A stretch of DNA of 64,000 nucleotides from Asterias rubens (GCF_902459465.1 NC_047075.1:13020001-13084000); one strand, 5' to 3'; counted from the first letter of the stretch, positions 27,579-62,039 are shown. The notes: a model not told the origin generated them from the letters alone. Numbers and translations are program-made.

Positions 27579-29130
27579 CTTATTTCCACCATGCAAAGTT
27601 TCAAATCCTACTTACATTAAATATGCCAAAGATTTAATTTTGAACACCTACCGTTTGCATCAAATCTTGTGAAGTCATTCAGTGTTTATATACTAGCCAT
27701 GCTAATATCTAAATTGTAATTTAGTTGTAATAGTGTTTTCATATTGTTGTATTGTAGTTTTCTGTTTTGTGATTGTATTATGAGTGGGGTCTCTAGTATA
27801 ACTCCAACAGTTCTTTTCAGAACCACCCCAACTCATTAGAGATAGTCATTACATGGTGTTACCGCAAACTCTTCTATATCTTATTTCCACCATGCAAAGT
27901 TTCAAATCCTACTTACATTAAATATGCCAATGATTTAATTTTGCACACCTACCGTTTGCATCAAATCTTGTGAAGTCATTCAGTGTTTTATGGAACCTTT
28001 CAGTTGTACACACGTGCATCTCAATACACATGTCTGACCATTTTCTTCCTCCATGGTCTGACCAGAGTAGGCATTGTAATTGTTTTGGTGCACCACAAAC
28101 GCTTGTTCATACCTCCATGGTTACAGTCATTCTTGCTCATGAAGTTTCCTCCTAGTCCTATTATTCCATCCTTGTTTGGAGCTACAGTATAATGATAAAG
28201 GATCAGCACATTTTCTCCAACTTATATCATCCAAAAAAGTGTTAGAACTAGACTTAGGTTTTTTGTTTTTTCCAAAAAAACGGTGTTCGGTTGAACGTTA
28301 CATGATGACGTAGTTCAAAAACATTGAACATAAAAAGAGTAATTTTATACAATGTGTCGTTTTTTATAGTTAAATGTGCATTACAGATTTGAGAATCCCA
28401 TTGAAATGTTTGAGAAAAGTGTGCAATAATGCGATCGTTAATGCAAAGCCACTCCGGATTTTTAGGTTTAGTTTTTCAACTGAAAATCTTATGTCACGAT
28501 AAAAAAGCCGGTTCTAAACGAAAGCAAGGTATCTGTTGAGTTTCAATGTTCAAATCAATCTCAATCTTGAGTTATTCCATAGATAAGCTCGAAAGTTGTT
28601 TTTTGATGAAAAAACACGAAGGCGAACTTTGACCCAGGGTAACGACCCGGAAGTTAAGGTCGTACGATTTTGGCGTGAACTTTTCAAATGTTGTCAAAGT
28701 CTTTATCTATTTGATGCCTAATTATGAACATCATAGTTTCTATATTCGTTGAGATACAGCAACAAGCAAATGGTAATTTTTCAACATAAAAAGCCTTGTC
28801 ATGACGTCATTGTAAAAGCTAGTGGTACTTGTAAGGATGACGATGATATAAGACGGATTATTCTCTGTTTACAATGATCTGGGTTGTATTTATTTAGCGG
28901 CCAATAAGTAAGTGCCCTATCTCAGCCTGATCGATAGAGGGCGCTAGACTAACTATCGTTACACCCTTCCTTTTATAAAAGAACTTTTGTTTATAAACTT
29001 AACATTTAACTAGAACTACAACGATAAACAACCATTATAAAACAATAACAATAACAATAACCTTGTACTGAGGTTAAACTTGAACTACAACAATAAACCA
29101 TTGTTATGATAAACAATAACAATCCTTGCA

Positions 29131-44765: not shown

Positions 44766-45940
44766 AAAGTGTACCTTAACAGAGATACTTCCAATGTACA
44801 ACAGTTTGACATGATCAACTTTGCATGAGTGATGATAGATACAGTTATATTAATTATAACTGTACAATTTGTTTTTGGATCCTAATTAAATGATTCGCTT
44901 AGCAACAAAAATTACGGTGGTACAATTTTAGTTGCTCTCCATTTAACAGCACCAAACCACTAACAAAATAAAAAGAAACTTTTGATGGAAACTCATTAAT
45001 GCACAGTATGCCTTATTTCCCCAGGTCAAAAAAACCCAGGGATCATGCCTCTATGTGTAAGTGACACTATAAGTAACTACAAACATATTGCACACACACA
45101 TTATTATGTTATAAGTTGTGTTTTTCAAATTCAAACAATAAACTTGTCTGAAGTCATTTTCCTTGTTTATTTCCAAACCAAGGAAAGGAATTTAAAATGA
45201 AGCTGATGGGCAGGATTATAAATTAGGGATGAGAAAGTAGAATGTCGGTACCATAACATATGCATTTAATTAAAATCTTATGAAACAAAGATGCGCACTG
45301 AACATTATTTATGACATTGCAACTGCAATCAAAATAAGACATTTTTGTGCATGTTCCTGCTTATGAATACATGTAGCTGTATAATCAAAGTTTGGTTATA
45401 AAATTGCAAATGTGGACATGACAATAATGCATGAGTGAAATGTGTCTTTCACTCACAAGTGCTGTGTTTGCTTATAAAAATAACTGTATAAAAGTAATCT
45501 ACACAGTGAGCAACATCAGTTTCAATCATGCTATGTGTAACTTCCTTTGGTATACCGTGGTTATAGTTTTGATTGACATAATACAAAAAAATGTCATGTA
45601 ATATTATGACTGTTATCAGGGTTATTTGTCTGTCAACTATTTTTTTAAGATTATTATTATTCCTGTTGAACTTGAGGGATGCTTTAGTAACTTCTGTGCC
45701 AATGTCATTATACTTCAGTCAAAACCTTGCTTTTAAAAATTCTCAAACCTCACACCATAGTATAATGTCAAATGTGATCATATAACCAAGGGCGATAGCA
45801 TATGGTCTTTATCCTGATGAAGTCTTCAACTGAAGGAGATCGGATGACATGGTCTTTTACCTGCACAAATAAGAATGATGTCAAATCTTGTTTTAATTGT
45901 CAAATGTAGTTGTCATGCAATACGTCAAATACAACTAAAA

Positions 45941-46957
45941 AACTAGACATAATTGCATTTGTGCACAAATGCAGAGCTGTTTCGTTAATGACATTTTAAA
46001 TTTTGTCAACTGAATTTGAAATTTATTCATTTTTTTTACAGCAGTCACGACCAATCCAGGCTATTTAAAAAAATAATTTGGATTATACCATGTTCGGATA
46101 GTCATTTATGTGTTAAAGGTGCAAAAATAGAAAAAATCATAAAAAATCTTGTGATGACGTCAATATGACGTCATTTCACAATTCACGAGAACCTGCCAAT
46201 ATCTAACAATCTACAAAGTTTCGAAAAAATCGCGTCATTACTTCGAGAGTTATACGACTTCAAAAAGTGCCCCTTTAAGGCCGCGTCACGTGAATCCCGA
46301 TGACGTCATTGATCTGAAACTTCACACATATGATGGCTGCCTGACAGTTAACGTGTGTGTAAAATTTGAAGTGATTACAAAAAACTTCACCACACACATC
46401 TTCAAAAAGTCCATTTTGACGAATTTTCAACCTGCCGCTAGAGGGCGCTGTTGCAATTTGTGACGTCATCAATATTTTTTTGAACTGCCCACCCTTGCTA
46501 GACACTTACGTCCTTGGAAAGCAACTTCATAACTTTTACCGATTTTGAGTTACAGGGCACTTCCGTTTTTTGCCCGTTTCAACCAGAAGTAGAGGTCATG
46601 TGAGGTCACGCACACGAAACAAAATGAAGACCTAATTTATCCCTACCACATCCCGCAAACAGAAACCTACGGTCTCGTTTGGCTGATTTGATATAGATTT
46701 TCAAACATTTAACATAAAACACCTTTAAGATGACGTCACGTGACCAGTGATGAGGTCATCATGACATCCTTGCTTTAGGATCATTATTGCACCATAACCT
46801 TCAATCCCTGAAAGTTTCATTGCAATTGCTCTTTGGGAACTATGCAAAAAATTGCGAGTACTGAATCAGACAAATAAAAAGAAAAAATAAATAAATAATA
46901 AAAAAAACTTTAACAAAAACAAGAGCTGTTTCGCTGCGCTTCGCTACGAAACAGCAA
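45941..46957 (-). mobile_element. Non-autonomous Helentron-associated element (HINE/DINE-1-like), structurally complete
   Basis: On the plus strand: AACTAG terminus (45941), perfect hairpin gcatttgtgcacaaatgc (45955-45972), subTIR gctgtttcgt (45976-45985). The other end has the inner IR gctgtttcg (46925-46933), the subTIR acgaaacagc (46946-46955) and an A-rich flank. This is the established DINE-1 layout. Confidence 0.8.
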
Positions 46958-47840
46958 ATAAATACTGTGTCTTTCAAAAGAAATTTACATTACTGATCAA
47001 TTTAAGCAAACTTTAAATAAGCAATACAGAAATGCTCATGTTGTTCACAAACTCAGGGTTTTCCAAATACCCTATTTTGCTAGTACATATAAATCCATAA
47101 TTTTGTTTGCAACTGTACATTAAAGAACGGTTTTTGTGATGAGTTAACAGTATTTTTAAAGAATACATGAAGTTGCAGAGCACCCATGTATTTGTATACG
47201 TATGACTCTAAGATATCATGAAAAACATTACCAAAACCTTGATTTTTACAACATATGCAACTGTCACAGCACAAGTAACTGTTCCTCATGATGACATTCC
47301 AGCAATGATGTTCTGATGTACACTCGGCATTACAATTCTATAATGAAATTAAATGTTGATAAATTTAGCAAATTGTCAATGGTAAAAAATCAAAACAAGT
47401 GTTTATCAAAGAGAAAACATTCAATATAGGTCCAAACAGTTTGGTTTGATGTCATAAAGGACAAGAAGATATTGAGTATTAGATCATACACTGGCCAAAC
47501 CTCTTAGTTTGTAAGAGTTTTGTAATGCATGATAACACAATGACTCATTTAATTATTCTCTAAAGATCTTGATATTGTATTTGGCAAAATAATTTGACCA
47601 ACATTTACAACTCACTTAGTCAACATTCTCTTAAACAGTGAGGAGAGTCCTGAGAGACGTTCCACACAGGCAAACAATGCAAACATATACATATACATGT
47701 TTTAAAATGCATGGCAGTATTGCAATTTGAAAATGTGTACCTGGACATGAGTTTCCGAACAGTTCCATTGTTTACTTCAGTGGAGTGAAGCTATGGAATG
47801 TACTATAACTCTTAAGTTTAGACTTTTAGTTGGACAGCGT

Positions 47841-48702
47841 TATGACTTCACCCAACTAAAGTACATCAGACTCAGTAGGTGAAGAAGACTCCCACGTGAG
47901 CAGGGTCATGATGTGATCCAACTTCAAAACATCTGACTCAGTAAGTGAAGAAGACTCTCAAGTGAGCAGGGTCATGATGTCACCCCACTTCAGTACATCA
48001 GACTCAGTAAGTGAAGAAGACTCTCAAGTGAGCAGGGTCATGATGTCACCCCACTTCAGTACATCAGACTCAGTAAGTGAAAAAGACTCTCAAGTGAGCA
48101 GGGTCATGATGTCACCCCACTTCAGTACATCAGACTCAGTAAGTGAAGAAGACTCCCAGGTAAGCAAGGGGTCATGATGGCACCCCAATCCAGTACATCA
48201 GACTCAGTAGGTGAAGAAGACTCTCAAGTGAGCAGGGTCATGATGGCACCCCACTCCAGTACACCAGACTCAGTAAATGAAGAAGACTCCCAGGTGAGCA
48301 GGGTCATGATGTCACCCCAATCCAGTACATCAGACTCAGTAGGTGAAGAAGACTCTCAAGTGAGCAGGGACATGATGGCACCCCACTCCAGTACACCAGA
48401 CTCAGTAAATGAAGAAGACTCCCAGGTGAGCAGGGTCATGATGTCACCCCAATCCAGTACATCAGACTCAGTAGGTGAAGAAGACTCTCAAGTGAGCAGG
48501 GTCATGATGTCACCCCAATCCAGTACATCAGACTCAGTAGGTGAAGAAGACTCTCAAGTGAGCAGGGTCATGATGGCACCCCACTCCAGTACACCAGACT
48601 CAGTAAATGAAGAAGACTCCCAGGTGAGCAGGGTCATGATGTCACCCCACTTCAGTACATCAGACTCAGTAAGTGCAGAAGACTCCCAGGTGAGCAGGGT
48701 TA
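47841..48702. repeat. 66-bp minisatellite, about 13 copies
   Basis: Unit agtacatcagactcagtaagtgaagaagactctcaagtgagcagggtcatgatgtcaccccacttc, with two alternating variants in the right half. Confidence 0.95.
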
Positions 48703-49426
48703 CTATGGCTACTCATTTATGTAGAAAGAACATTGTTTGTGACAAAGATTTACAGTTTCATAGTGATTTAGTGATGATTACAATTACAATATTGTTATTG
48801 TGTCAAATTTTTCAACAAGATCTGTACTTGAATGTTTTGAATTTTAATCAATACTTACAGGATATTGTGTATGGCTTGACCAGAAATTCCAACTGTTACA
48901 AAGATTCATTATGGAGTACATCTTTTGCATAGCTCTTGTATTGTGATACTCTATCTGTTCATCAAAAAAGAACAAATATTATAATACTTCCTTCAGTTTA
49001 CTTAAGGGTTGTCGAACTACATGCATTACTAATTTTTTTAATTCGTTAAACAAATTGAAAATTCATAATAAACTATTAATGGAAAATACATGTCTTGGAT
49101 AAAAAAAAATAAACAATTCACACACTGACTCCGCTATTTTAGTTTAACTTTGATGACTCTTATTGATGTTTTCTCATTGATGATACATTTTTGTACACTC
49201 ATTGTAAGTGAGCTTATGCAATCTGTTTTCTTTCAAGTTTGCAATATTAATTGCTATTACTCCTTTGTTCTGAATAACTTTACCAATGATACAATCTGTG
49301 CTTTCACCTGTTTTTCCTTTCTGTATCATTACTTTTGCGTAAATTGTGTAAACATAAAATATTTTCATTTCACTTATTTGTTGCATTTTATTAGTGTTTC
49401 TTTAAATAAGCTACCTTTCACATGTC

Positions 49427-50098
49427 TCACACTTGCTCACACTGAATACGTACAGCCTCATGATAACTGTAATATGTGGGAATGACATCACACTCAACTG
49501 ATTCTATCCCTCTGACATAAACATGATCAATCAATGTTCCCTTCTCAGTAGTAGCATCCACAACACACTGCTTATAACCATGCTCTCTCATCATATTCAC
49601 AATACTTGATGACTGTGTACTTTTGACTTTCAGAATATCTTCATTGAAATCTTCCATTATGATACATCTGTTGGATACTTTGTGAAGTTCATCTAAAAGA
49701 TTTTTCAGACTGGACATGAATTCCCGAAACACATATGAAACTGGTCGATAGATAACAACAACTGTGAATGACACATTGGAAATGATATGAAATGCAATAT
49801 ACTCAATGTTTTGTACTGGCAATGTGAGTTTCATGGTTGCTTTGTCTCTTCTACTGTATACTGCTATACCACCATGACATTGCTGTTGTAATGTTTCAGT
49901 CAGCTGAGTGGAGTTATCATAAGAAAGACATCTTGGCTGATGGTAGCTTTTGAAGTTATCTAAGTGCAAGTCATACTGCTGTTGATCTTCAGTCCAGGTT
50001 TCTGTCAGACAAATGACATCTGATTTCATTATTTCACTGTTGCATTTCAAGTCCATATAATGAGCTCTCAAACCCTGGATGTTATGCAAAATGATGCT
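49427..50098 (-). pseudogene. Helentron C-terminal apurinic/apyrimidinic (EEP) endonuclease domain
   Basis: [32 protein letters not shown] (GDFN variant), [16 protein letters not shown] (SDH variant). It is in frame with the helicase C-terminus. Confidence 0.9.
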
Positions 50099-50149
50099 TA
50101 CAATAGCAGGTGTGTTTGTACAGCCAATACTTTGTTTATCAATAAATGA

Positions 50150-51530
50150 TGGCATATGCTTCAAAGAATCAGCAACAGCTTCATTACAGTATATGAATTT
50201 CTCATGAAAACCTTCAATGACCAGACCATTCAGTGATGTGACACGACTCAGACTAACATAAGCTTGCCCTGCAGTAAACGTTTTATCAAGACACACTACG
50301 GCTTTGTCTGTTGTCATTCCTTGTACCTTATGAGCTGTGCATGCCCAACTTAACTTCAATGGAAACTGATGACGTACCCATTTTTTTACCAATACTTTCT
50401 TCCTGAATCTCTATTGGTACACTATAACCTTCATTTGAAGATGATGCAAATTGTTTCCTCAACTTCATTCCAACCTTGTTGTTATCAAACTTAACATAGA
50501 TACATTTTACTTCATCAGATTTATTGTGTGACATTACTAATTGTGATACGGTACCAAACACTCCATTAACAAGGCCATCAGATACATCAATGTTCTTCGT
50601 TAGCATAACTCGAGCACCAACACCAAGCAACAGTGACAGTGGCAAGCTTCCAGACTTCTTTAAATTTGTTCCTTGTCTGAGCTTCTTAGCATTGTGTGAA
50701 TCTGTCTCATAATCCTTTGCTTCAATAAAAACACAATCTCAACACTGTGAATGCAGAATCTTCATGTTTTGTTTATCCACTTGTTTGTTACATGGGAGTA
50801 TATGGCAAGCCTCATTCCACTCTTCACCTGTCTCACGTTCTTTCAAAATTGTTACATCATCATCCTGTAAGGCTTCATCTTTCTTTCTAACTCTAAGTCT
50901 ATTGAGTATCTCTGCAAATTTTGCATCTTCCTTTTGCCTCATGATCTCATTCAGTTCAACTAACTTGAAATTGTCATTCCACAAATCACATGTTGCAGTT
51001 CTGTCATACAAAGGTTTTGCTTTCACTGGAGGTAACTGATAAAAATCTCCAACAGCTAAAATGCTGACATTGCCAAAAGGATTATGATTCCTGGATTGCT
51101 TAATCTGTCTTAGACGTCCATGGATGTAATACAATAATTTCTGACTAACCATTGAAACTTCATCTATAATCAAAATCTGCAGCTGACTGAGCTTACTACG
51201 AAGTGTACTGATCTTCTCTTCACCAAGTGGTTGATATGGTAGTCTCACATCTATTGGTATAGACAATGCATTATGATTGTAGCACCATGTACATAAAATG
51301 CAGCCACACCTGTAGGAGCAGTTAGCATTACAGACACATCGTCAGGATTTCTCATCATTGATCCCAGTATTCTGGTTGCTTCATAATCAATACACTTTAT
51401 TAACTGAGATTTCCCTGTACCTGCACCACCAGTAACAAACACTTGAAATGCTTCAGGGTTTGTACCATTAGTCTTGTCTATGCACCATTGCCGAATGTTG
51501 TAAAACACCTCTCTCTGTTTGGCATTTAAT
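50150..51530 (-). pseudogene. PIF1-family SF1B helicase domain
   Basis: [11 protein letters not shown] (Walker A), [18 protein letters not shown] (Walker B), [70 protein letters not shown]. Confidence 0.97.
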
Positions 51531-52347
51531 GACCTCATCATATTGAACGCATCTGACTTTGCTACTCTGGAGGTGTGAGCTTCAATGTCACAGACTCTCT
51601 CCTCTTTCTTATCACCTTTCAAGTCTGGAATACTCAACTCATCTTCACCTTCATCTATGACAGGCTGCATTTGCTCTTCACATTCATCTCTCTGCTGTTC
51701 AGTTTCTGGACTGCTTAATGCCCAAGCATCTTCCTGTACACCAAACTTCTCAAGGTGTAGCTCTGCATTTTCAAATGATTCAAGATCAACTTCAAATATG
51801 CAACGATTACTATCAACAATCTTTTTAACAGACTCTAATTTTTCAAGTAAATTGACAAACCCATTCTCATAAAAGTCACAATATGTTTCAAATGTTGGTG
51901 GTCTCAAATGGGCATTAATACGGTATGGGAGAAATAGCTGTAGAATACTTTGATAATACTTCTCAGGACATTTGGTGACTGAAAATCTTGGATATCTTAT
52001 GACAGCTGGATCAGTTCTGGAGCGTTTCATTACATGTCCCAAGTCATTCTTCAATGCATACACTGGTGACTGTCTCTTATTACTGGGTACTTTATAATTG
52101 TTGTACAGCACTCTGTACTCTGAATAAAATTTAGATAGACACATTGATTCAAATGTATCAATATCTGGCCTTGCTTTATAACGATCTATTCTGCTAATCA
52201 TCCACACGTTGTCTTCATTACTATCATCATCATCATTATCATCATGATTCCTTGCATTGTTCTGAATAACACTCAAGGGCAAGGTCATTCGTACTGAATT
52301 TTCTCCTAATGGTATGAACTCAACCTTTCTAGAACACTCTTGAAGTC

Positions 52348-54138
52348 TCAATGAACAACAGCGATAAACTGCTTCTTGGGCTGACACTTCCAATTTTGTA
52401 GATAAACACTCCCAATCTGTTTCATACTCTGTTTAGCATCTTGGTTACCTTCTTCAGCCTCACTCTGTGCATGCTTCAGTAATTGTCCCATCTCACGTTC
52501 TGCTTTGCTCATGTAACTGATAACATAACATACACACGCATAAACATCAGTGATAAATTGAATATCCATATTGGCATTCCAGCATCTTAACAAGTCAGGA
52601 TTGTAATGAGTAACCCAAGCATCTTGTGGCTCTCTTTTCAACACAATGTTCACTTTTTTAGTGAGCACATTATTGGCTTCTTCAAAATCATCCTGTGTTA
52701 TACCAATTGTTCTGAACAGTTCATCAGTTGTCATGTGTTGATTTTCCTCCTCATTAACAGCATTCCACACCGATTTCAACAATTCCTTAGCATCATGTTC
52801 AATTAGTGCATTATCAGAATTATCTTCACAATTATCCACGTCCATTGGCTCAGGATTGGCAATAAATGTTCTCATTGATGGCGGCCTTGGGAAATTGAAT
52901 CTACACTGTGTTCCTTTCTTCTTACATGACTTAGAATGTCTCTTACTATGTTGCTGTACACTGCTTACAATCTCATTCAACTCTTCATCTTCTTTCTTTG
53001 TTGGCAATGCACAACTTACATACCTATCAACAAACTGTGCCACTTCATCATCACTCTCTGTACTCAACTTAGGTGCATCTTCAATCCAAAATATACAATG
53101 AGTGTGCGGTGAGCCTCTTTGCTGGAATTCTACTCGATAAAAATAATTTTTCACTTTCCCAATTGGTGCTGCCTTTGACATGATCACATCTTTCAAAAAT
53201 GTATGAAATCGTTTATCAAACATTCTCGCGACAGTTACAGGATTACTCCTCAATAACAGACATTTGTCATTCCAATCTAATTCTTCAATACTCCTTGAGT
53301 CACCTTGTTGTATGAGTAGTGTATTGATTAATTCAGGCCATCTCATATCAGCTGCAGAAAATGAACAGAACCATGTTGGTATACCAAGCTGTCTTACCAT
53401 TGCTAATATATTCTTCTGACACGATTGCCAATACGGAGGAGTTCCTCTGATAGGTTTCAAGAACTTGTATCCCTGATCTGATTTCAACATGTCTTTCAAC
53501 TTGACTTTATCATTAAGCATTTTAGCAGTGACATTCTCACCATCATTCATTTTACCTGAGCCTTTTCTTAATGCAATAGAAACACTTGAAATGACTTGAT
53601 TTAATTCAGACAGATATTGAGCATAAAAGATGTACTGTGTACTCTTTGCAAATCTATTATCCACATTCATCAGTCTGTTGTTAAAATATCTACTAAGTGT
53701 TATCTCCACATCACGCTTATCACTAAATACTGGCCCACCTTTAGGGAACAAGACTGGAAAACATTTGCACTCATTAGATGGGTCCATAAGCACTCTGATT
53801 GGATTATTTCCTTCACATGGTGCTACACAATACACATCATCAAAATACTGATCCAAAACCTCTTGTCCAATATTTGCAGTCTGTAAACATGTATCTAAAG
53901 GTATTCCTCTCAAACGTTCTTCATCTGTTTCTATCTCATTAGCATTGTCATCATCAATATTGTCTCCAACATTCTCTGTAACTTCACTTCCATTATCTTC
54001 CTCTTCCAAATCATTATTCCAGTCTGCGTCTATTTCAATCTCATGGTACCACTTGTTATTGTGTTTCAGGTACTGTAAAGCAGTTTGTATGTGCTCCTTA
54101 TTCACAAATTGATACTGATAGTATCCTTTAAAAGTCAA
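52348..54138 (-). pseudogene. Helitron Rep (HUH endonuclease) domain
   Basis: [51 protein letters not shown] (HUH), [51 protein letters not shown] (Y..Y motif 3). Confidence 0.96.
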
Positions 54139-54869
54139 TTTCCGCTTGAGCTTGACACGTATTATTTGATCAACATTTTGAGATCTCGGTTAACATTTCA
54201 CTGTTTCAGACACATCTGATGGTACACATACTACAGGTCCATGTACACCATGCTGTCCACCTTTAGGTAATGCCATCAACTTTAGAAATGGAACATTCAG
54301 GGCAATTAGATGCTCTTCTAACTTATTCAAACATGCAAACTCTTCAGGAATGTCTACTACATGCAAATTATTACAAGAAGCTTCAGCAGGTATCTTATCA
54401 TTCAATAACTTGCGATGACATGTATAACATATCCACAAACAGGACCTGCTTGACTCACGCACAGTACACTGCAATCTACAATTATGATCACAATTGTGTA
54501 GATATTGTTCACTGATACAATCACTATTCTCATATTTATTCTTGTTACATTTGATGACTTGCTTACGAAACAACAGTCTCAAACACACTGCGCACACATA
54601 CTCTGGTCCATTCGATATTTCCATGTTAAACTCAGATATCACATGCTTTATATCACGTTTCTTCACTTTCTTAAGCATTGATCGACTCTTATTCTTTCTT
54701 TTAATACTCTTCCTGAATTCTTCATTTTTCTGATACTTGGATGTTGAAGCCTTCTTCACTTTATTTCTATAAAAAACATCAACATTATACATGTGAGCTG
54801 TTCTCTCAATTGTTCTTTTCTTGTATTGTGGGTTATGGCAATATTTCAATTTGATCCCATTAATAACTT

Positions 54870-55560
54870 TGTTCCTGAAAGTCTCATTTTCATGGTACTT
54901 TACTTTGCTTGCATTTTTCACATCACTCCTAAATTCATCATTTTCTTGATACTTCACTTTGCTTGCATTCTTCACATCACTCCTAAATTCATCATTTTCT
55001 TGGTACTTCACTTTGCTTGCATTCCTTACATCACTCCTAAATTTATCATTTTTTTGGTACTTTACTTTGCTTACGTTCTTCACATCACTCCTAAATTCTT
55101 AATTTTCTTGATACTTCACTCTGCTTGCATTTTTCAAATCACTCCTAAATTCATCATTTTCTTGGTACTTCACTTTGCTTGCATTCTTCACATTACTTCT
55201 AAATTCTTCATTTTCTTGATACTTCACTTTGGTTCCTTTCTTCACATCACTCCTAAATTCTTCATTTTCTTGATACTTCACTTTGCTTGCATTCTTCACA
55301 TCACTCCTAAATTCATCATTTTCTTGGTACTTCACTTTGCTTGCATTCTTCACATTACTTCTAAATTCTTCATTTTCTTTATACTTCACTTTGCTTCCTT
55401 TCTTCACATCACTCCTAAATTCTTCATTTTCTTGGTACTTCACTTTGCTTGCAGTCTTTACATCACTCCTAAATTCATCATTTTCTTGGTACTTCACTTT
55501 GCTTGCATTCTTCACTTTATTCCTCTAATTTTCCTTTTCTTTATACTTCATTTACTTGCA
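54870..55560 (-). repeat. Coding 54-bp tandem repeat (about 13 copies of KNASKVKYQENDEFRSDV) inside the Helentron ORF
   Basis: Visible in both DNA and translation. It is followed by a Cys-rich region CAVCLRLLFRKQV..WICYTCH..LPKGGQHGVHGPVVCVP. Confidence 0.92.
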
Positions 55561-56120
55561 TTTTTTACTTCTTCTTGAAACTTTAAATTAGTCTTGTACT
55601 TTCTTTGACTTTGATCAATTTCCATAGCCCTTTGTTTCTCACTGATATGATATTTTTCTTTATTTTGAACTTTCACTGACCCAATAAACTTTTCTCTGTA
55701 TTTCTCATCAAACTTGTATTTCTTTTTTTTGTGCTCTCTAATCTTTGCTTTCTTTGTCTCTCTAAAAACAACATCATTCTTGTATTTATCACTCTCATGT
55801 TTCCTTTTTCGACGTTTAGTCACTTCACTTTGACTAGTACTTGTACTTCCTCTACGTTTTTCTATCATCCGTTCTTTTGCTAATTGTCTGACTTTCACTA
55901 CATTTAGACGTTTTCTTTTGTTTGGAGTACTTCTTTTCACGGATTCTTTCCTTACTGTAGTCTTATCATTAGTACTCTTATTTGTAACCTGCTTCTCACA
56001 TTGTTCAGACTGTTTGTCATCACTCTGTTCAGTGTTTTCTGCACAGCCATCAAATGTTTTATAACAATCTTCTTGTTTTTTGTGAATATCACTTACTTGT
56101 GGCACCAACTCATTTACTGA

Positions 56121-56507
56121 TGTGACAACATCATAATGCACTCTGTGTTTGTGATCCAGATAAATTCCTATTTCAGATGTGTCAGCACTTCCCTCAACAT
56201 TCTTTGCAGAAAATTGACACCAGTTATATACTTCATCAAATGTGTATATATCAATACAAAGCATGTGGCTCATTGCCATAATTTCAACTTCTGTTGCCCA
56301 TGTACCAGTATCAAACATTCTCTGTCTAATTACATAATCCTCCACATCAGCATATCCATCTCGCAAAAAACATGTCAATTTATCAGCATTCCTCAACAGA
56401 TGATTGACACAAGCAACTCTCAATTGAACATGGTTACCTTCAGTTCCTGACATGGCAAATGATATAGCTCTGAAGAAACAATTACCATCACCGCTTATAC
56501 ATCTTAC
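56121..56507 (-). pseudogene. OTU-family cysteine protease domain
   Basis: ISGDGNCFFRAISF (catalytic Cys), GTWATEVEIMAMSHML, IYLDHKHRVHYDVV (catalytic His). Confidence 0.93.
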
Positions 56508-56960
56508 AGATCTGGGTTTACCTATGACTTGGCATTGTACATTAACTGTGTTGGACTTCAAGTGTGATACATCAAAACCATATGCATTACAAAGAGTGAC
56601 CTTAGCATCGAAGGTTAACGGAGAGAATTTCATAAGACCAGGTCCACTTACTTCAACTACTTCCACTTCATTACTGGATTCACTGTCTGCACTGTCACTA
56701 CAATATATATCTCTTCTAATCGGATTACTTGGCTTATCAAAATCATCTTCAACATTACAATATTCCTTATTTAAACTCTCTGTATCTTGATGACCAATAT
56801 TTACATCTTTTTTTGTGTTTGTGTCATCTGTCATCTGTGGTACTTCAAACAAGTCACACTCCTCCATATTAAAACACAACTCTATGGGTTCTACTATGCC
56901 CTGTTGATCACTTGAAATTTCATCATCTGTACATGTACACGTTACAGCCTCACCATTGAT

Positions 56961-57568
56961 ACAAAGAGATACACCAGTTAATTCATACTGCTCATTATCA
57001 GACAGATTCATGGAATGAGCTAAATTTTTACAATAGGTGTATACCTGTTCAAATGCATTCGCTTGCATCAGAATACTTGTTCCATCTTCAACCATACAGC
57101 CGTGGATACTTCTGGAATGGGAATCAAATACAAAATACATGCCATCTTGAGCAATTACAGCAAATGTGTTTCCATGGAAACTTATGAAGCATGCATGATA
57201 TTTCTGAAGATTTTGTTCAAGTGCAGTTTTCAATGGCATCATATTAAATTCAATCAAGTGACAAGCATTTTCAACAAATGTACCCGATACAGACACATGA
57301 TACTTCATACTATACTGTGTGTCAAACACATCCAAGTCAGTTGGCAATTCATTAATCAATAAGTAATGTTCAATGTTGAGCTTTCTTGTAAGAAACTATA
57401 CAATTCATTCCCAGTCTTGAGAATATTATCCAGATCACTACACATCCAATTCCTCAAATGTTTTTTCTTGCTATACATCATTGGCACTAGACAATTAGCA
57501 ACACACTGTTTACCACGATTTACTCCAAATCCTTCATCTCCTTGATGAAAACTTCCTTGTGCAAGTAT
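56961..57568 (-). pseudogene. Herpesvirus large-tegument-type (peptidase C76-like) deubiquitinase domain
   Basis: QGSFHQGD..FG.NRGKQCVANCL, W..SDLDNIL..GNELY, then across a 1-nt frameshift at ~57360 LLINELP..FAVI...YFVFDSHSR. The Cys and D-x-H catalytic pattern is present. Confidence 0.8.
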
Positions 57569-58208
57569 TGATCCATGTAATTGTCTTAATTGAGCATTTG
57601 CATCCAACATTTCATTACTGTTATCAACAACCACTTCGTCATGTTTATTTTTCACATTTCCTTTTAATTCAATATTCTTACACTTCCTTGGTTTGATTTT
57701 CATACGCCTTTTCTTAGTTACATGTACTGTGCCTTCATTCAAGCTTTCAACATATACTTCAGATTTTCTCTTACTTAACTTCTTGACATCATTGTCTATT
57801 TGACTGACCACTGGTAAACACACATGAGATTCAACAGTGCCTCCAGACTTTGACTCACTGATTTGTGTCCCTTTGCTCTTGGCTCTGCTTCAAATCATTT
57901 CCTTCACATTTATTTTTATTTTTCTTGTTCCTTAAATTATATCCTCCAGTTTGATGAACAGTATTTTGTTTCTTACCTGCAACATGAAATGCATACCTGT
58001 TCAGCACTTTATCAACAATTACATAATCCATAACGACATTATCAATTTGTAGCTCACCTTCAGTTACTTTGATTTTCGAATCGTCACTACAAGAATCACT
58101 GTCAGCAAACGACTCAACTACTTCTTCTTCCATGTTGCTCTCATATATGTTCTCATCTGTAGAAATTGCAAAATCATAAAACAAAGACATTGTGTAATTA
58201 CATCGTCC

Positions 58209-58358
58209 ACATTTGGAACACATCCATAATACTGGCTTGTTTACTACACAAAGTTGCACATTCGAAAATCCCATACAATGTACATGATATGCTACATCAC
58301 AGCTATTACATTCCATTGTTCTTACTGATGGACTCAATTTTTCATCACATATCCAACA
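58209..58358 (-). pseudogene. PHD finger (C4HC3)
   Basis: CWIC..MECNSCDVAYHVHC..WMCSKC. Confidence 0.88.
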
Positions 58359-59882
58359 CTGACTAACTTCCCTTTTCTTTTGAACCTCAATGCTTTGTTT
58401 CTTACAGAAAATCCTTGCTTTTTGATTCTCCTTTACTACCTTTGTACACACACTCTTCTTATTGAAGCTTTCTCTGTCATTATGCTTCCTTCTGTGCAAT
58501 ACCGTCTCAGCAAGCATGTTATTCAGAACAAAACTCAAACTTCTTCTTGTATGACTTTCAATATTCTTCCGTGCCTTGTCATATTTCTCTCCCTCTTCTT
58601 TGGACATACAAACTTCCACCACCTTGCCATTCTTATGCCTTCGTAGCATCTTCTTCCGCTCATTTCTTCTGATCTTCTTTGTGTTGGGTTTTGAAACTTT
58701 CTTCTCATGACAATACTCTATTACACATTCCAGTACCTGACTCCTGCTACAACAAGTTTGTTTCCTTGCCTGCAACTCACCCAATGCTTTCCAATTACTT
58801 ACTCTTTGTCTGGTCATTCTCTTCACTCTGAAATTCTTCAACTTCATCACTTTCCTTTCCAGCTCATGGCAACCACTTTGACACATTTTACTAATCCAGC
58901 CTCTTTGTCATGCCTTACTTTATTGCCCTTTTTCCTATCTCTCAACTTACTATCCTCTGTTACCTTCTTTATCTCTCTCGTTACTTCCACAATTTTTCTC
59001 ATACCTTCCTTCTTGTGTGCCACCATCTTCAACTCCAAGCTTGCCTTCAGCACTTCCACCACATTTTCTTTCAGCAGATGTCACAGATTTCATTTGAGCT
59101 TCATAGTCAGACTTTATTAACGCTTTGTATTCATAGCTTGATTCATAGTTTGTTGCACCTTTTCGACTGCTCACACTGCCCCGAGGAGGTGCCAACCTCA
59201 AGTCAGGTACATCTTTTAGACTGTCCTTACTGACTTCAGGAGATGTCAACCTTAAGTCAGATCTATGTACATCTTTTAGACTGTCTTTAATGTCTTGAGG
59301 AGATGTACAAAATCCCAAACCATTACAAGTAGGAAGGGAAATGTCACATGGACAGTGAGAGACATCAGTCCATGGACAGGACAATCTCTTTTCAGCCATC
59401 TGCTTTGCTCGAAACTGACACACTGCCTCTCTCTTTGCTTGCAGTTTAGCCCGGTACTTTGGCATAATCTATTGAAAAGTAAATGATACAACATTAAAAA
59501 GAAAACCAAGAAGCAAAAGTTTCAATAACCACAACAAAATATTACAAGCTAAGGCCTGAAAAATCATTTTGACACAGGCACTTTCACCTCAAAAGAATAA
59601 AAAAAGATCACATTCCATATCAACAACATAAAATCTCTAAGTCTCACTCATGACTATTTAAACTGACATAACCCCCCAAGCAAGAACAGTGGAGTGGCTG
59701 TCACAGTTATGTCATACTAATCCCTCCAATCAGTGTAAATGGCATGGACGGTTACCATTGCATTTACATGACAATATTGTTCATCCCCCCCCCCCCCCCA
59801 TCATGCCTAGGCTACAAGAATGAAAACATATGAGTCTTTTTTTCATTTTTCATTATTCATTATTTTCTTATTGATCATTCTG

Positions 59883-60107
59883 TTGTTGATGCAGCCATCG
59901 GTCAATTGCGCAGCCATTGACCAAACACGCAAAGATCGACTGATTGCGCAAAACCATTCCTGCACAATCAACTGACCATGCAAAACCATTCCTGCACGAT
60001 CAACTGATCGAGCAAAACCATTCCTCCATGATCAGTCTGTTCTAAAAAACATGTCCGTTGCACAATTGATCAATGGCTGTGCAATTCACTGATGGCTGTG
60101 TCAACAA
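59883..60107. mobile_element. MITE with ~40-bp imperfect TIRs and internal ~32-bp repeats
   Basis: ttgttgatgcagccatcggtcaattgcgcagccattga vs tcaatggctgtgcaattcactgatggctgtgtcaacaa; aaaaccattcct occurs three times inside. Confidence 0.7.
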
Positions 60108-62039
60108 TAGATCTTCAAATAGCACAGTGCATTCAGTCAATCACTCAAATTGAGCAATCGTGCACAACTCACAACATGCAGATTGAGCAATGACAGGGAC
60201 ACCGTGGATGGCAATGATCACTTTATAGCTCACCACTGAATAATATAACGGTTTGCAGCATGGTGTAGGTTTTAATATGTCATTATGATCGTTTACCACC
60301 AAGTGTTTAGATAATTTGAAACTTCAAATCTATGATGAAGCTGTGCCCTTTTTCCAATAATGATTGAAAACAAATAAAAATAATAACAATTTTCAGTGGT
60401 AGTCTTTTGGACTTGCAGGCATTACACGCAAATCTACAACTTTTGTTCTCATAGCCTTGTCATCTCTCCATACTCTCCTCTCCCCCTAGCCCTGCAGCCC
60501 TGTTTTTCTCTAGAGCTCTTATTTTAATTGTTCGTAAACTATTTTTGTTTAATACTACTTACTACGCCTAACACTACACAACAAAAAAAAACAACAAAGA
60601 ACCACATCTATAATTATTATTTAATCATCTAAAATAGTCAAACATCTCACAAATCATTCATGACCAACCTCCATGCAATAACTAACTACTTCATTCTCAA
60701 GTACACAGGAGACCGAACCCCCCCCCCCAAAAAAAAAAAAAAAAAAAACAACAACAAAAACAAACAAACAAACATAAGAAACTCATGTCAAATTCACAGT
60801 ACAGTCACGTAGTAGTAGTACAGGCTTATCAATCAGCCAACTGGTATGGTTGCCACACACATTTTAAATTCATAATAAGCTACACACTATTGATTTCACG
60901 TTTCCAAGTCGCTTTATATTTATGATTTATTTTAGCTATTGTCATTCTTACAACTTACACTCTAGCAGCCATCTTCCATAACTGTAGCCGAAGTCGCTTC
61001 GGACAAGGTATCCCACCATGCACTTGGCAAGTTCATGACATCACGCATACAAAAATTGAGCAGCTCGCAGTTCATGTCATGAATATAAACATGTAGGTCA
61101 CGAACATTGTTTTATACAACAATGCAATGTCAATCCCGTTACATACACAACAAAAGGTCTCAAACAAAAAAGGATCATAAAACAGATACTTTCACCAAAC
61201 TGATACCAGCATGTAGTAGTATTACTGCAACCGAAATAATTATAGCCAGCCCACTGATATTATTAGAGAGTGATGAGCCACCCGCGTATTTCCGGAAACT
61301 TTTTTTTTTTTCTGCAGTCCAAATTGCCACTGTCGTAGTGCTTTTGAATGAGCAATTTTTTTTTCCAAATCGATTCAAAAAAGGGAATCCTTAAACAGAA
61401 TTAGCAAAATTTTTGAAGATGGCAATTTTAAACTGCAGAAAAAAAACGCTTTCCAGAAATGACAGCCGTGTATTCCGTGAATTAGAACGCATGCAGTACA
61501 GGGAGGTGGAAAATGGCTCATTTCATTTCTGTACATGAGTCCGTCTACTATCAGACACAACTTTCACATTTTTATTAAAAGATAATATTGACATTTATAA
61601 AACAAACATTAACCACGTACAAAAAATGTTAGTCAATATCACAAAATGAGCAGCAAACACAGTCACACAGTGTGTGTATGCAATTTGGCATGTGTATACG
61701 CTGTTTATATACTAAATGTTCTTAAACTGTTACTCTGAACATCATGTTTATCTTCAATGCAATGTAAGAGTCATGTGAACTAGGAGAAGTAATTGAACCT
61801 CGTTCTCATCGTCGGTTTCAATCACGCACCACATTTTCGATTGCTGCATGCCCCAATAAAAGGAAGTTAAATAAACTCCACGAAACGTATACTGCATGTT
61901 AAAAAGGCACTGCACATATTATGCAAGACGCATCCATCATTTTTAATTGTGATATTATCTTGTGCAAGTTCGCGTGGCCAACTAGAGTGACTACACAGCA
62001 CTCGAGTTGAGTAGATCGACCATGCGCGCCTCAGTGTGC

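What the first reader, a model, noticed from the sequence alone, without database searches (positions are those of the whole stretch)
49427..59468. Very long Helentron polyprotein carrying two unrelated deubiquitinase-type proteases plus a PHD reader
Seen in sequence: the fragments stitch into one ~3,300-aa frame ordered basic N-terminus, PHD finger, C76-like protease, OTU protease, 18-aa repeats, Cys-rich region, HUH Rep, PIF1, APE endonuclease. Established: Helentrons carry Rep-Hel plus an APE domain and often OTU or zinc fingers. Inference: a herpes-tegument-type protease, an OTU and a histone-reader-type PHD together suggest a module for chromatin targeting, ubiquitin/SUMO removal, or self-cleavage of the polyprotein. 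I cannot tell whether this exact architecture has been described.
Basis: partly seen in the sequence, partly recalled or inferred. Interest (0 to 1): 0.72.

Follow-up and report, generated by a model that had tools for sequence, protein, structure and literature searches.

The report
Decayed starfish Helentron with PHD and deubiquitinases
This is a broken copy of a rolling-circle jumping gene (a Helentron) whose giant protein carries two different ubiquitin-removing protease domains, a pairing already published for such elements. Only the extra PHD-type zinc finger in front of them appears undescribed.

Summary
On the minus strand, 49427-59468 is one colinear reading frame of about 3,300 codons. 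It is broken by six frameshifts, three isolated in-frame stops and one stop-rich patch. The domain order is basic N-terminus, PHD finger, tegument-type (VTD/C76) protease, OTU protease, 18-aa repeats, DUF6570, HUH Rep, PIF1 helicase, APE endonuclease.

About ten paralogues in the same genome keep this order. Their long open frames overlap and together bridge every domain junction, so the 5' part is not a separate gene. The PHD, VTD and OTU domains evolved under purifying selection (dN/dS 0.09-0.25), about as strong as on Rep and the helicase.

The main novelty claim fails. Erven et al. 2022 (PMC9741609) described VTD domains in Helentrons, 121 of them also carrying OTU. They showed ubiquitin/NEDD8 cleavage but no reaction with SUMO probes, and solved a structure (8ADD). 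HELIANO (PMC11417382) lists Herpes_teg_N, OTU and DUF6570 in these elements.

What is left is modest:
- a conserved C4HC3 PHD finger
- an invariant Q-x-G-G-Y-x-L-R motif
- both seen only in echinoderm-type relatives
- nearest kin in this genome are PHD fingers of LINE retrotransposons

The scan already reached the same verdict on a sibling copy 98 kb away (s1-150699).

The parts
58953..59468 (-). Basic N-terminal piece, ATG at 59465, with a 20-aa (60-bp) repeat x 2.2 at 59184-59306. Homology to other copies begins near 59350.
58908..58952 (-). Stop-rich patch: five stops in the incoming frame within 45 nt. This is a lesion, possibly two close frameshifts.
   Evidence: a relative in run X5 differs in length next to it
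58146..58388 (-). PHD-type zinc finger (C4HC3 with W-x-C-x2-C) plus a conserved N-Y-x3-L-F extension. The Pfam PHD core is 58209-58358.
57921..57947 (-). Invariant short motif Q-x-G-G-Y-x-L-R followed by a basic run (H-Q-T-G-G-Y-N-L-R in the window). It lies between the PHD finger and the VTD.
56961..57568 (-). Tegument-type (VTD / peptidase C76) cysteine protease domain, split by a frameshift near 57365. The catalytic Cys (G-K-Q-C) and the F-D-S-H motif are kept.
   Evidence: paralogue tested
56120..56492 (-). OTU cysteine protease domain with D-G-N-C and H-Y-D motifs. The closest solved structures are OTUD3, OTUD1, OTUD5 and nairovirus OTUs.
54884..55562 (-). 54-bp (18-aa) tandem repeat, 12.6 copies, Lys-rich. 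It contains one frameshift (near 55540) and one in-frame stop (55099-55101).
54022..54399 (-). DUF6570 (the Cys-rich region before Rep), interrupted by the in-frame stop at 54190-54192.
53092..53688 (-). HUH Rep domain (Helitron_like_N). The H-T-H motif and the Y-x3-Y pair are present.
50538..51529 (-). PIF1-type SF1 helicase with Walker A G-A-G-T-G-K-S, Walker B D-E and the 2B domain. Broken by a frameshift near 51275 and a stop at 50739-50741. A further frameshift lies near 52391 upstream.
49427..50038 (-). C-terminal APE-type (EEP) endonuclease and the stop codon (49427-49429). A frameshift near 50386 lies just upstream.
47848..48700 (-). 66-bp tandem array, 12.9 copies, in the 3' non-coding part of the element. 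Arrays of the same 66-bp unit follow the ORF in the Asterias amurensis copy, and a short match to the unit follows the APE end in a C21 fragment. The + strand 'ORF' 48174-48932 is read through this array.
47210..47347 (-). Last block of homology to the A. amurensis copy (70% over 141 nt). Similarity ends after ...GATATCTT, a tentative 3' boundary.
   Evidence: no significant hairpin

Best explanation
The stretch is an old, inactivated insertion of an autonomous Helentron (HLE2-group rolling-circle transposon) in an echinoderm genome, most likely a sea star.

Its ancestor encoded one protein of about 3,000-3,300 aa. The domain order was PHD finger, VTD (herpes-tegument-like, C76) deubiquitinase, OTU deubiquitinase, Lys-rich repeats, DUF6570, HUH Rep nuclease, PIF1 helicase, APE endonuclease.

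Shown here:
- the architecture
- its unity as one ORF
- its conservation across about ten paralogues
- purifying selection on every domain
- the decay of this copy

Taken from published work on homologues: Rep and helicase carry out rolling-circle transposition, and Helentron VTD domains are active ubiquitin/NEDD8 isopeptidases that prefer K48, K63 and K11 chains.

Inferred: the two DUB domains protect the transposase, or host factors it needs, from ubiquitin-dependent degradation or signalling. The PHD finger, whose nearest kin in this genome sit at the N-terminus of LINE retrotransposon proteins, helps to bring the protein to chromatin. This copy makes no functional protein.
For: Architecture and lesions are shown.

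Linkage. VTD and PHD copies lie at a constant distance upstream of Rep in every family copy. Open frames of 1141 aa (PHD+VTD+OTU), 1405 aa (OTU+DUF6570+Rep) and 1921 aa (DUF6570+Rep+PIF1+APE) overlap in domain content. The same order is found on an unrelated ENA contig and in Asterias amurensis.

VTD membership.
- Pfam scores of 40-46 bits in paralogues, above the gathering score of 25.
- phmmer E 5.8e-9 to 8ADD, with Cys and F-D-S-H aligned.
- AF2 model with pLDDT 86. All six significant Foldseek hits are VTD structures: 8ADD at TM 0.81, M48 2J7Q at TM 0.69-0.75 (two chains), 8ADC (two chains) and 8ADB.

PHD membership.
- C4HC3 and the W-x-C are invariant in 10 sequences.
- The profile hits solved PHD fingers with E down to 1.2e-7.
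- 9 of 10 members match PF00628 at E up to 1 (best 1.3e-5).

Selection. dN/dS is 0.09-0.19 for PHD, 0.12-0.25 for VTD, 0.21 for OTU, 0.11 for Rep, 0.13 for the helicase and 0.18 for APE. Linkers give 0.24-0.94. Window against its nearest copies gives 0.12-0.55.

Published biochemistry and architecture: PMC9741609 and PMC11417382.
Against: The element's termini were not found. There are no subterminal inverted repeats above chance and no significant 3' hairpin. Homology to other copies fades at about 59350 and about 47210. The Helentron assignment therefore rests on the protein, not on the ends.

No enzymatic activity was tested for this family's VTD, OTU or PHD.

The window's PHD lineage lacks the cage Trp of H3K4me3 readers.

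The Foldseek search with the PHD model gave no significant hit. PHD fingers were most of the top rows, but with E > 0.05.

The host's identity is inferred from the nearest relatives and from earlier notes. It was not given.
Confidence: 0.9

Rival explanations
1. The 5' pieces (57356-59465: PHD and the first half of the tegument-type protease) belong to a separate host gene that merely lies next to a Helentron.
For: The frame is broken between the pieces in the window. A gene model in A. amurensis covers only the 5' part (P0006, 881 aa).
Against: The PHD-VTD-OTU-Rep order and spacing recur in all family copies. Single open frames span PHD+VTD+OTU and OTU+DUF6570+Rep. The frame breaks lie at different places in different copies. 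The VTD itself is split by one of the window's frameshifts, so the two sides are one coding unit.
Confidence: 0.03
2. The protease domains act mainly in cis. The giant protein is a true polyprotein that cuts itself at di-glycine sites, for instance at the invariant Q-x-G-G-Y-x-L-R motif between the PHD finger and the VTD. This would release a PHD module from the transposase, as viral DUB-like proteases do.
For: An invariant Q-x-G-G-Y-x-L-R island sits in an otherwise fast-evolving, length-variable linker in all nine PHD-bearing sequences aligned; it is absent from the Lytechinus PHD-bearing relative P0004. In several sequences it reads Q-(Q)-T-G-G, like a SUMO tail (a resemblance recalled from my own knowledge). 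PMC9741609 notes that viral DUBs often process polyproteins at di-glycine sites.
Against: No cleavage data exist. The motif is followed by a basic run and could equally be a nuclear-import or binding motif. P4 is Gln, not the Leu of ubiquitin-like tails. No second conserved di-glycine site was seen between OTU and Rep. VTDs were shown to act on ubiquitin and NEDD8 adducts.
Confidence: 0.12
3. The accessory domains are passengers: host gene fragments captured by a Helitron-like element, with no role in transposition.
For: Helitron-like elements are known for gene capture. HELIANO treats such domains as ancient captures. A second Helentron lineage in the same genome (C2, C6) has no Pfam-detectable PHD, VTD or OTU, though it keeps Rep and DUF6570, and the C6 copy also keeps PIF1 and APE. 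The module is therefore not essential to all Helentrons.
Against: The domains are in frame with Rep, at fixed positions. Their catalytic and zinc ligands are kept. Their dN/dS of 0.09-0.25 across lineages with saturated or near-saturated dS equals that of Rep and the helicase. VTD plus OTU recurs in Helentrons of molluscs and fish, and VTD in those of cnidarians.
Confidence: 0.07
4. The stretch is a remnant of an endogenous herpes-like virus rather than a transposon.
For: Pfam's name for the protease family (Herpes_teg_N), and weak similarity to the large tegument protein of a herpesvirus (6PPB, E 0.35).
Against: Only the roughly 200-aa protease domain resembles herpesvirus proteins. Everything else is Helentron. 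The best structural and sequence match is the zebrafish Helitron VTD, not a viral one. No capsid, terminase or polymerase genes were seen in the ORFs next to it.
Confidence: 0.01

Closest known systems
VTD- and OTU-bearing Helentrons of Erven et al. 2022 (for example zebrafish DrT2; structure of DrT1-VTD2, PDB 8ADD), PMC9741609
   Same: RepHel with a C-terminal APE endonuclease. A tegument-like cysteine protease upstream of Rep in the same ORF, together with an OTU domain. The same catalytic Cys and D-x-H motifs. Fold match at TM 0.81.
   Different: That paper lists vertebrates, insects, cnidarians and molluscs but not echinoderms, and mentions no PHD finger. The copies here add an N-terminal PHD finger plus the Q-x-G-G-Y-x-L-R motif. 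The window copy is a pseudogene.
HLE2 (Helentron/Helitron2) elements as catalogued by HELIANO, PMC11417382
   Same: Herpes_teg_N, DUF6570, EN (Exo_endo_phos) and OTU are reported as stably included domains. Herpes_teg_N and DUF6570 are judged to share the RepHel ORF.
   Different: PHD is not named among the stably included domains quoted in the main text. The supplementary table could not be read.
Herpesvirus large tegument protein N-terminal deubiquitinase (UL36USP / M48USP, peptidase C76)
   Same: Same fold and catalytic arrangement (2J7Q, TM 0.69-0.75). Pfam Herpes_teg_N is above the gathering score in the paralogues.
   Different: About 13-14% identity. The domain here is embedded in a transposase, not a capsid-associated tegument protein.
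PHD fingers of CR1/L2-type LINE retrotransposons (Metcalfe and Casane 2014, PMC4120745)
   Same: In this genome the best non-Helentron matches to the Helentron PHD profile sit N-terminal to APE (and RT) domains of LINEs. They share the W-I-C-C-x-C...N-(Y/F)-x2-S-(L/M)-F extension. Identity is 38% over 65 aa, pairwise E 1e-11. The paper proposes PHD shuffling among TE lineages and a role in targeting the genome.
   Different: A different class of element. The APE domains of the two are not close (E 0.15), so there is no sign that PHD and APE came together.

Membership tests
Helentron (HLE2 rolling-circle transposons) | HUH Rep nuclease fused to a PIF1-type SF1 helicase | tested here: met
   Helitron_like_N 124 bits, PIF1 60 bits. 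H-T-H, Y-x3-Y and Walker A/B motifs are present.
Helentron (HLE2 rolling-circle transposons) | APE-type endonuclease fused to the C-terminus of RepHel | tested here: met
   Exo_endo_phos 38.3 bits in the last open piece. It is in one 1921-aa open frame with Rep and PIF1 in a paralogue.
Helentron (HLE2 rolling-circle transposons) | Subterminal inverted repeats of about 12-15 bp at both ends | tested here: not met
   Only three 12-mers were shared between the two flanks, which is chance level. The ends may be lost or too diverged. The 5' boundary is unknown.
Helentron (HLE2 rolling-circle transposons) | Short 3' stem-loop, and insertion within T-T with T runs at the boundary | tested here: inconclusive
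   Homology with the A. amurensis copy ends after ...GATATCTT / ...GATATGTTTT. Folding of the last 90 nt is no better than shuffles, z 0.29 and 1.26.
Helentron (HLE2 rolling-circle transposons) | Internal or 3' tandem ('central') repeats | tested here: met
   A 66-bp array lies 3' of the ORF in the window and in the A. amurensis copy, and a short match to the unit follows the APE end in a C21 fragment.
VTD / peptidase C76 deubiquitinases | Sequence match to the family profile | tested here: met
   Window halves score 24.2 and 14.6 bits on complementary profile parts. Five paralogues score 40-46 bits against a gathering score of 25. E 5.8e-9 to 8ADD.
VTD / peptidase C76 deubiquitinases | Catalytic Cys and the Asp-x-His pair | tested here: met
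   G-K-Q-C and F-D-S-H are present in the window. Q36, C37, D164, S165 and H166 are invariant in 17 homologues.
VTD / peptidase C76 deubiquitinases | Papain-like VTD fold | tested here: met
   The model of the paralogue's domain (pLDDT 86) matches 8ADD at TM 0.81, 2J7Q at 0.69-0.75, and 8ADC and 8ADB. No other family gave a significant hit. The window's own broken domain was not folded.
VTD / peptidase C76 deubiquitinases | Isopeptidase activity on ubiquitin or NEDD8 | not testable with these tools
   Shown only for zebrafish Helitron VTDs in PMC9741609.
OTU deubiquitinases | Profile match and the catalytic Asp/Cys/His | tested here: met
   OTU 41.9 bits. D-G-N-C and H-Y-D motifs are present. 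OTUD3 E 8.6e-8.
PHD finger | C4HC3 ligand pattern with Trp two residues before the seventh ligand | tested here: met
   Invariant in 10 sequences.
PHD finger | Profile similarity to known PHD fingers | tested here: met
   PF00628 at 24.1 bits (gathering score 24) for the window finger alone. 9 of 10 members match at E up to 1, best 1.3e-5. The profile against PDB gives E 1.2e-7 to 1e-5 to INTS12-like, BPTF, PHF1, MTF2, TAF3, Pygopus and MLL1 fingers.
PHD finger | Cross-brace PHD fold | tested here: inconclusive
   The model (pLDDT 77) gave no Foldseek hit at E <= 0.001. The top rows are mostly PHD fingers, with RING and LIM among them.
PHD finger | Histone-tail reading (aromatic cage or H3 N-terminus pocket) | tested here: inconclusive
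   The position of the BPTF cage Trp is W in five of ten sequences, but A or V in the window and its A. amurensis relative, F in P0001 and H in P0004. By my own reading of the alignments, the other cage positions do not align with aromatics. Binding cannot be tested here.

The most novel reading that the evidence does not exclude
Echinoderm Helentrons acquired a two-part N-terminal module: a LINE-type PHD finger plus an invariant Q-x-G-G-Y-x-L-R motif. In this reading the PHD steers the transposase to particular chromatin, and the element's own deubiquitinase cuts at the di-glycine to release or activate it. That would make this a transposase that is both chromatin-guided and self-processing.
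Probability: 0.08. Interest if true: 0.6.

Novelty: new variant of a known kind. Interest (0 to 1): 0.27.

Why it matters
It matters little for the headline claim, because Helentrons with a tegument-like and an OTU deubiquitinase are published, with enzyme assays and a crystal structure.

Three modest points remain:
- These elements also occur in echinoderms.
- One lineage carries a selected PHD finger related to those of LINE retrotransposons. This is another example of domain shuffling between unrelated classes of mobile elements, and a candidate for chromatin-guided integration.
- A conserved di-glycine motif gives a concrete, testable site for the long-standing idea that transposon-borne DUB-like proteases might process their own protein.

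The window copy itself is dead and has no functional consequence.

Tried and rejected
Lesions. I did not repair or join the broken pieces. Every open piece was searched apart, and intact paralogues were used for the domain tests.

Termini.
- An inverted-repeat search between the flanks gave chance-level 12-mers only.
- Own-genome searches with both flanks found only short unrelated repeats upstream and the 66-bp array downstream.
- Sensitive alignments with five paralogues and the A. amurensis copy found no homology upstream of about 59350.
- Folding of the presumed 3' end was not better than shuffles.
- End-like repeats taken from the nested Helentron region 80-110 kb away match the window only at 28244-28810. 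That is unrelated to this element and in the opposite orientation.

Orthology. The A. amurensis copy is 73-80% identical with different flanks, so it is a family member and not an orthologous insertion.

PHD distribution.
- A word search with the PHD region alone gave nothing, which is uninformative.
- The Atlas search returned only generic PHD clusters at scores below 0.9.
- The statement 'PHD only in echinoderm-type relatives' therefore rests on 44 proteins.

Origin of PHD and APE. The Helentron APE and the APE of a PHD-bearing LINE are not close, so I dropped the idea that the two came in together.

Docking test. Docking of the di-glycine linker into the VTD with complex prediction came back not folded under a rule of the tool. 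It gives no evidence either way, and I did not try it by another route.

Reads. No listed run is on record as RNA, so expression was not assessed.

Full report
**What is in the sequence**

On the minus strand, 49427-59468 can be read as one colinear coding region of about 3,300 codons that has decayed. Frame tracing gives eleven open pieces. They are separated by six frameshifts (near 57870, 57365, 55540, 52391, 51275 and 50386) and three single in-frame stops (55099-55101, 54190-54192, 50739-50741). There is also a 45-nt patch with five stops (58908-58952).

Each was searched on its own. Pfam finds these domains, in order:
- a PHD finger (24.1 bits when scanned alone, gathering score 24)
- Herpes_teg_N in two halves on either side of the frameshift near 57365 (24.2 bits for profile positions 1-63, 14.6 bits for 124-162)
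- OTU (41.9)
- DUF6570 (40.1 and 24.8, on either side of a stop)
- Helitron_like_N (124.4)
- PIF1 (60) plus its 2B domain (36.3)
- Exo_endo_phos (38.3)

The catalytic and binding motifs are still readable in the pieces:
- G-K-Q-C and F-D-S-H in the tegument-type domain
- D-G-N-C and H-Y-D in OTU
- H-T-H and the tyrosine pair in Rep
- Walker A and B in the helicase
- the E, D-x-N and D-H motifs of the endonuclease

Contigs from an independent marine metagenome run reproduce the sequence across the break inside the protease domain without a gap, and 58947-59230, which takes in the first two stops of the stop-rich patch, likewise. Only one of the six frameshift sites lies in a homopolymer. The lesions are therefore real, at least where they could be checked.

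**One ORF, not two genes**

The window's genome (417.6 Mb, 150 contigs; the window is C15:13020001-13084000) holds about ten copies of this family. In every one the PHD finger lies about 1 kb upstream of the tegument-type domain, which lies about 3 kb upstream of Rep, on the same strand.

The frame breaks lie at different places in different copies. The long open frames overlap in content:
- 1141 aa with PHD, tegument-type protease and OTU
- 1405 aa with OTU, DUF6570 and Rep
- 1921 aa with DUF6570, Rep, PIF1 and APE

tblastn of these frames is colinear with the whole window stretch. The same layout is seen on an unrelated ENA contig and in Asterias amurensis (GCA_032118995.1, CP134961.1). There a colinear copy is 73-80% identical in DNA but has different flanks. 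The ancestral element thus encoded a single protein of roughly 3,000-3,300 aa. The idea that the 5' pieces belong to a separate gene is rejected.

**Selection**

Codon comparisons between paralogues give these dN/dS values:

| Region | dN/dS |
|---|---|
| PHD finger | 0.09-0.19 |
| Tegument-type domain | 0.12-0.25 |
| OTU | 0.21 |
| DUF6570 | 0.10 |
| Rep | 0.11 |
| Helicase | 0.13 |
| APE | 0.18 |
| Linkers | 0.24-0.94 |

Window against its nearest copies gives 0.12-0.55, with dS 0.4-0.8 where it is not saturated. The family diversified as working elements, and the accessory domains were as constrained as the transposition core. The window copy decayed after insertion.

**The tegument-type protease**

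The paralogue's domain matches PDB 8ADD by sequence (E 5.8e-9), with the catalytic Cys and F-D-S-H aligned. 8ADD is deposited under the title 'Viral tegument-like DUBs'. I take it to be the zebrafish Helitron VTD structure reported in PMC9741609.

An AlphaFold model built from 17 homologues (pLDDT 86) finds only VTD structures at significant level. These are 8ADD (TM 0.81), murine cytomegalovirus M48 (2J7Q, TM 0.69-0.75), 8ADC and 8ADB. Membership in the VTD / peptidase C76 family is met by profile, catalytic residues and fold. I did not fold the window's own domain, which is split by a frameshift.

**The PHD finger**

The eight zinc ligands (C4HC3) and the Trp two residues before the seventh ligand are invariant in ten sequences. 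A profile of these sequences hits solved PHD fingers with E down to 1.2e-7, including an INTS12-like finger, BPTF, PHF1/MTF2, TAF3, Pygopus and MLL1 PHD3. Nine of ten match PF00628. The fold search with a model of the window's finger was not significant, although PHD fingers fill most of the top rows.

It is a PHD finger. Whether it reads histones is open. The position of BPTF's cage tryptophan is Trp in five of the ten sequences, but Ala or Val in the window's lineage and its A. amurensis relative.

The finger was found only in the five echinoderm-type relatives among 44 homologues. It was absent from the molluscan, fish, hemichordate and cnidarian ones. A second Helentron lineage in this genome has none of the three accessory domains.

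The best non-Helentron matches to the finger's profile in this genome sit at the N-terminus of LINE retrotransposon proteins of the PHD-APE-RT type. Identity is 38% over 65 aa, and the matches include a shared extension after the finger. PHD fingers and their shuffling among CR1/L2 LINEs are described in PMC4120745. The APE domains of the two element types are not close.

**A conserved di-glycine motif**

An invariant island, Q-x-G-G-Y-x-L-R followed by a basic run, lies between the finger and the protease. The surrounding linker is otherwise variable in length and sequence. The island occurs in all nine PHD-bearing sequences aligned, but not in the Lytechinus PHD-bearing relative P0004 and in none of the relatives that lack the finger. 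In the window it reads H-Q-T-G-G-Y-N-L-R.

It could be a DUB-type cleavage site. PMC9741609 notes that viral DUBs often process polyproteins at di-glycine sites. It could also be part of a nuclear-import or binding motif. The one test I could think of, docking the linker into the protease, was not run by the tool under one of its rules. I did not seek another route. This remains an idea.

**Extent of the element**

3' of the stop codon lies a 66-bp tandem array (47848-48700, 12.9 copies). An array of the same 66-bp unit follows the ORF in the A. amurensis copy (26.1 copies), and a short match to the unit follows the APE end in a C21 fragment. The + strand 'ORF' 48174-48932 is simply read through this array.

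A last block of homology (47347-47210) ends after ...GATATCTT. This fits the T-rich ends and T-T target described for Helentrons in PMC4067079. However, no significant hairpin and no subterminal inverted repeats were found, and the 5' boundary is unknown. The Helentron assignment therefore rests on the protein architecture and the internal repeats, not on the ends.

**Comparison with what is known**

Erven et al. 2022 (PMC9741609) reported the following:
- Most non-viral homologues of the herpesvirus tegument deubiquitinase lie inside Helitron ORFs of the Helentron subclass (with APE).
- 121 of these also carry OTU.
- Three zebrafish domains react with ubiquitin (two also with NEDD8) but not with SUMO1, SUMO3 or ISG15 probes.
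- They prefer K48 and K63 chains (two also K11).
- One was crystallised.

HELIANO (PMC11417382) lists Herpes_teg_N, DUF6570, OTU and EN among domains stably included in HLE2 elements. It judges Herpes_teg_N and DUF6570 to share the RepHel ORF. SUMO removal is not what the published assays show.

No paper in the held library links a PHD finger to a Helitron or Helentron protein. Echinoderms are not mentioned in Erven et al.. Repbase and Dfam could not be searched.

**Host**

The nearest named relatives are from Asterias amurensis, Lytechinus variegatus and Patiria miniata. Holders of the DNA include marine and macroalgal metagenomes. Earlier notes of this scan call the genome a sea star. That is memory, not a test.

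**Earlier work of the scan**

A sibling copy 98 kb upstream of the window (my L017) was followed up before (s1-150699). The verdict was the same: the protease pair is published and only the PHD finger is mildly new. I reached this independently before reading that note, and I tested its claims on both copies.

**Verdict**

- This is an ordinary, dead copy of a known kind of element, in a lineage that adds a conserved PHD finger and a di-glycine motif.
- Interest is low to modest.

Noticed in passing
G000 C15:12.46-14.00 Mb (window = C15:13.02-13.08 Mb): Eight of about ten copies of this PHD-VTD-OTU Helentron family lie within the last 2.2 Mb of the 14.67-Mb contig C15. The others are at a contig end (C24) or on small unplaced contigs (C92, C58). 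This could reflect local hopping, segmental duplication or a repeat-rich chromosome end.
   Followed up: partly
L017:6146-6207 and L014:6684-6729: Two paralogues about 90% identical both change frame at the same A-rich run (A7-G-A...A9) after the OTU domain, yet differ there by 2 nt. Possible causes are a homopolymer length error in the assembly, slippage, or independent indels. Apart from this break, L017 would be one open frame of about 3,040 aa.
   Followed up: partly
L026 (C2:143001-153000) and L027 (C6:9934001-9944000): A second Helentron lineage (Rep about 44% identical). L027 has DUF6570-Rep and PIF1-APE in two open frames of 1311 and 791 aa; in L026 only a 1468-aa DUF6570-Rep frame was scanned. 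No Pfam-detectable PHD, VTD or OTU in the 450-475 aa before DUF6570.
   Followed up: partly
L028:2317-4977 (C21), L031:2626-3756 (C4), L029:3720-4418 (C16), L030:3941-4525 (C1): LINE-type open frames with an N-terminal PHD finger followed by APE, and by RT in L028. Their fingers are the closest non-Helentron kin of the Helentron finger in this genome.
   Followed up: partly
window 59934-60034 and 61300-61400: Two 100-bp stretches upstream of the ORF, the first a 32-bp unit x 3.2. Together they drew over 500 candidate loci in the genome's first look (40 of them scored), about 80-87% identical and often in small arrays on both strands. This is an abundant short interspersed or minisatellite repeat of unknown type.
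   Followed up: no
window 45931-46962: A repeat 95-97% identical to C15:13983888-13986000, next to another Helentron copy and arranged there in tandem. Not characterised.
   Followed up: no
window 28244-28810: Matches at 78-96% to repeated end-like sequences of the nested Helentron region at C15:12906890-12935601 described in note s1-150698. This is a different, non-coding Helentron-type element in the opposite orientation to the ORF studied here.
   Followed up: partly
window 55551-59468, runs X4 and X5: Runs of two other coded organisms hold hundreds of short contigs 90-99% identical to this stretch at high word depth. They carry length differences at or next to three of the window's frame breaks (near 57365, 57860, 58959). 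Closer and probably more numerous relatives of this copy exist in related samples.
   Followed up: partly
G000 C6:16881141, C7:10227412, C11:20225880, C7:12895969, C17:6561397 and others: A repeated family of open frames of about 1,220-1,230 aa, each with a PHD finger scoring about 28-32 bits (several at exactly 32.3) against the Helentron finger profile. Probably another PHD-bearing mobile element. Not examined.
   Followed up: no
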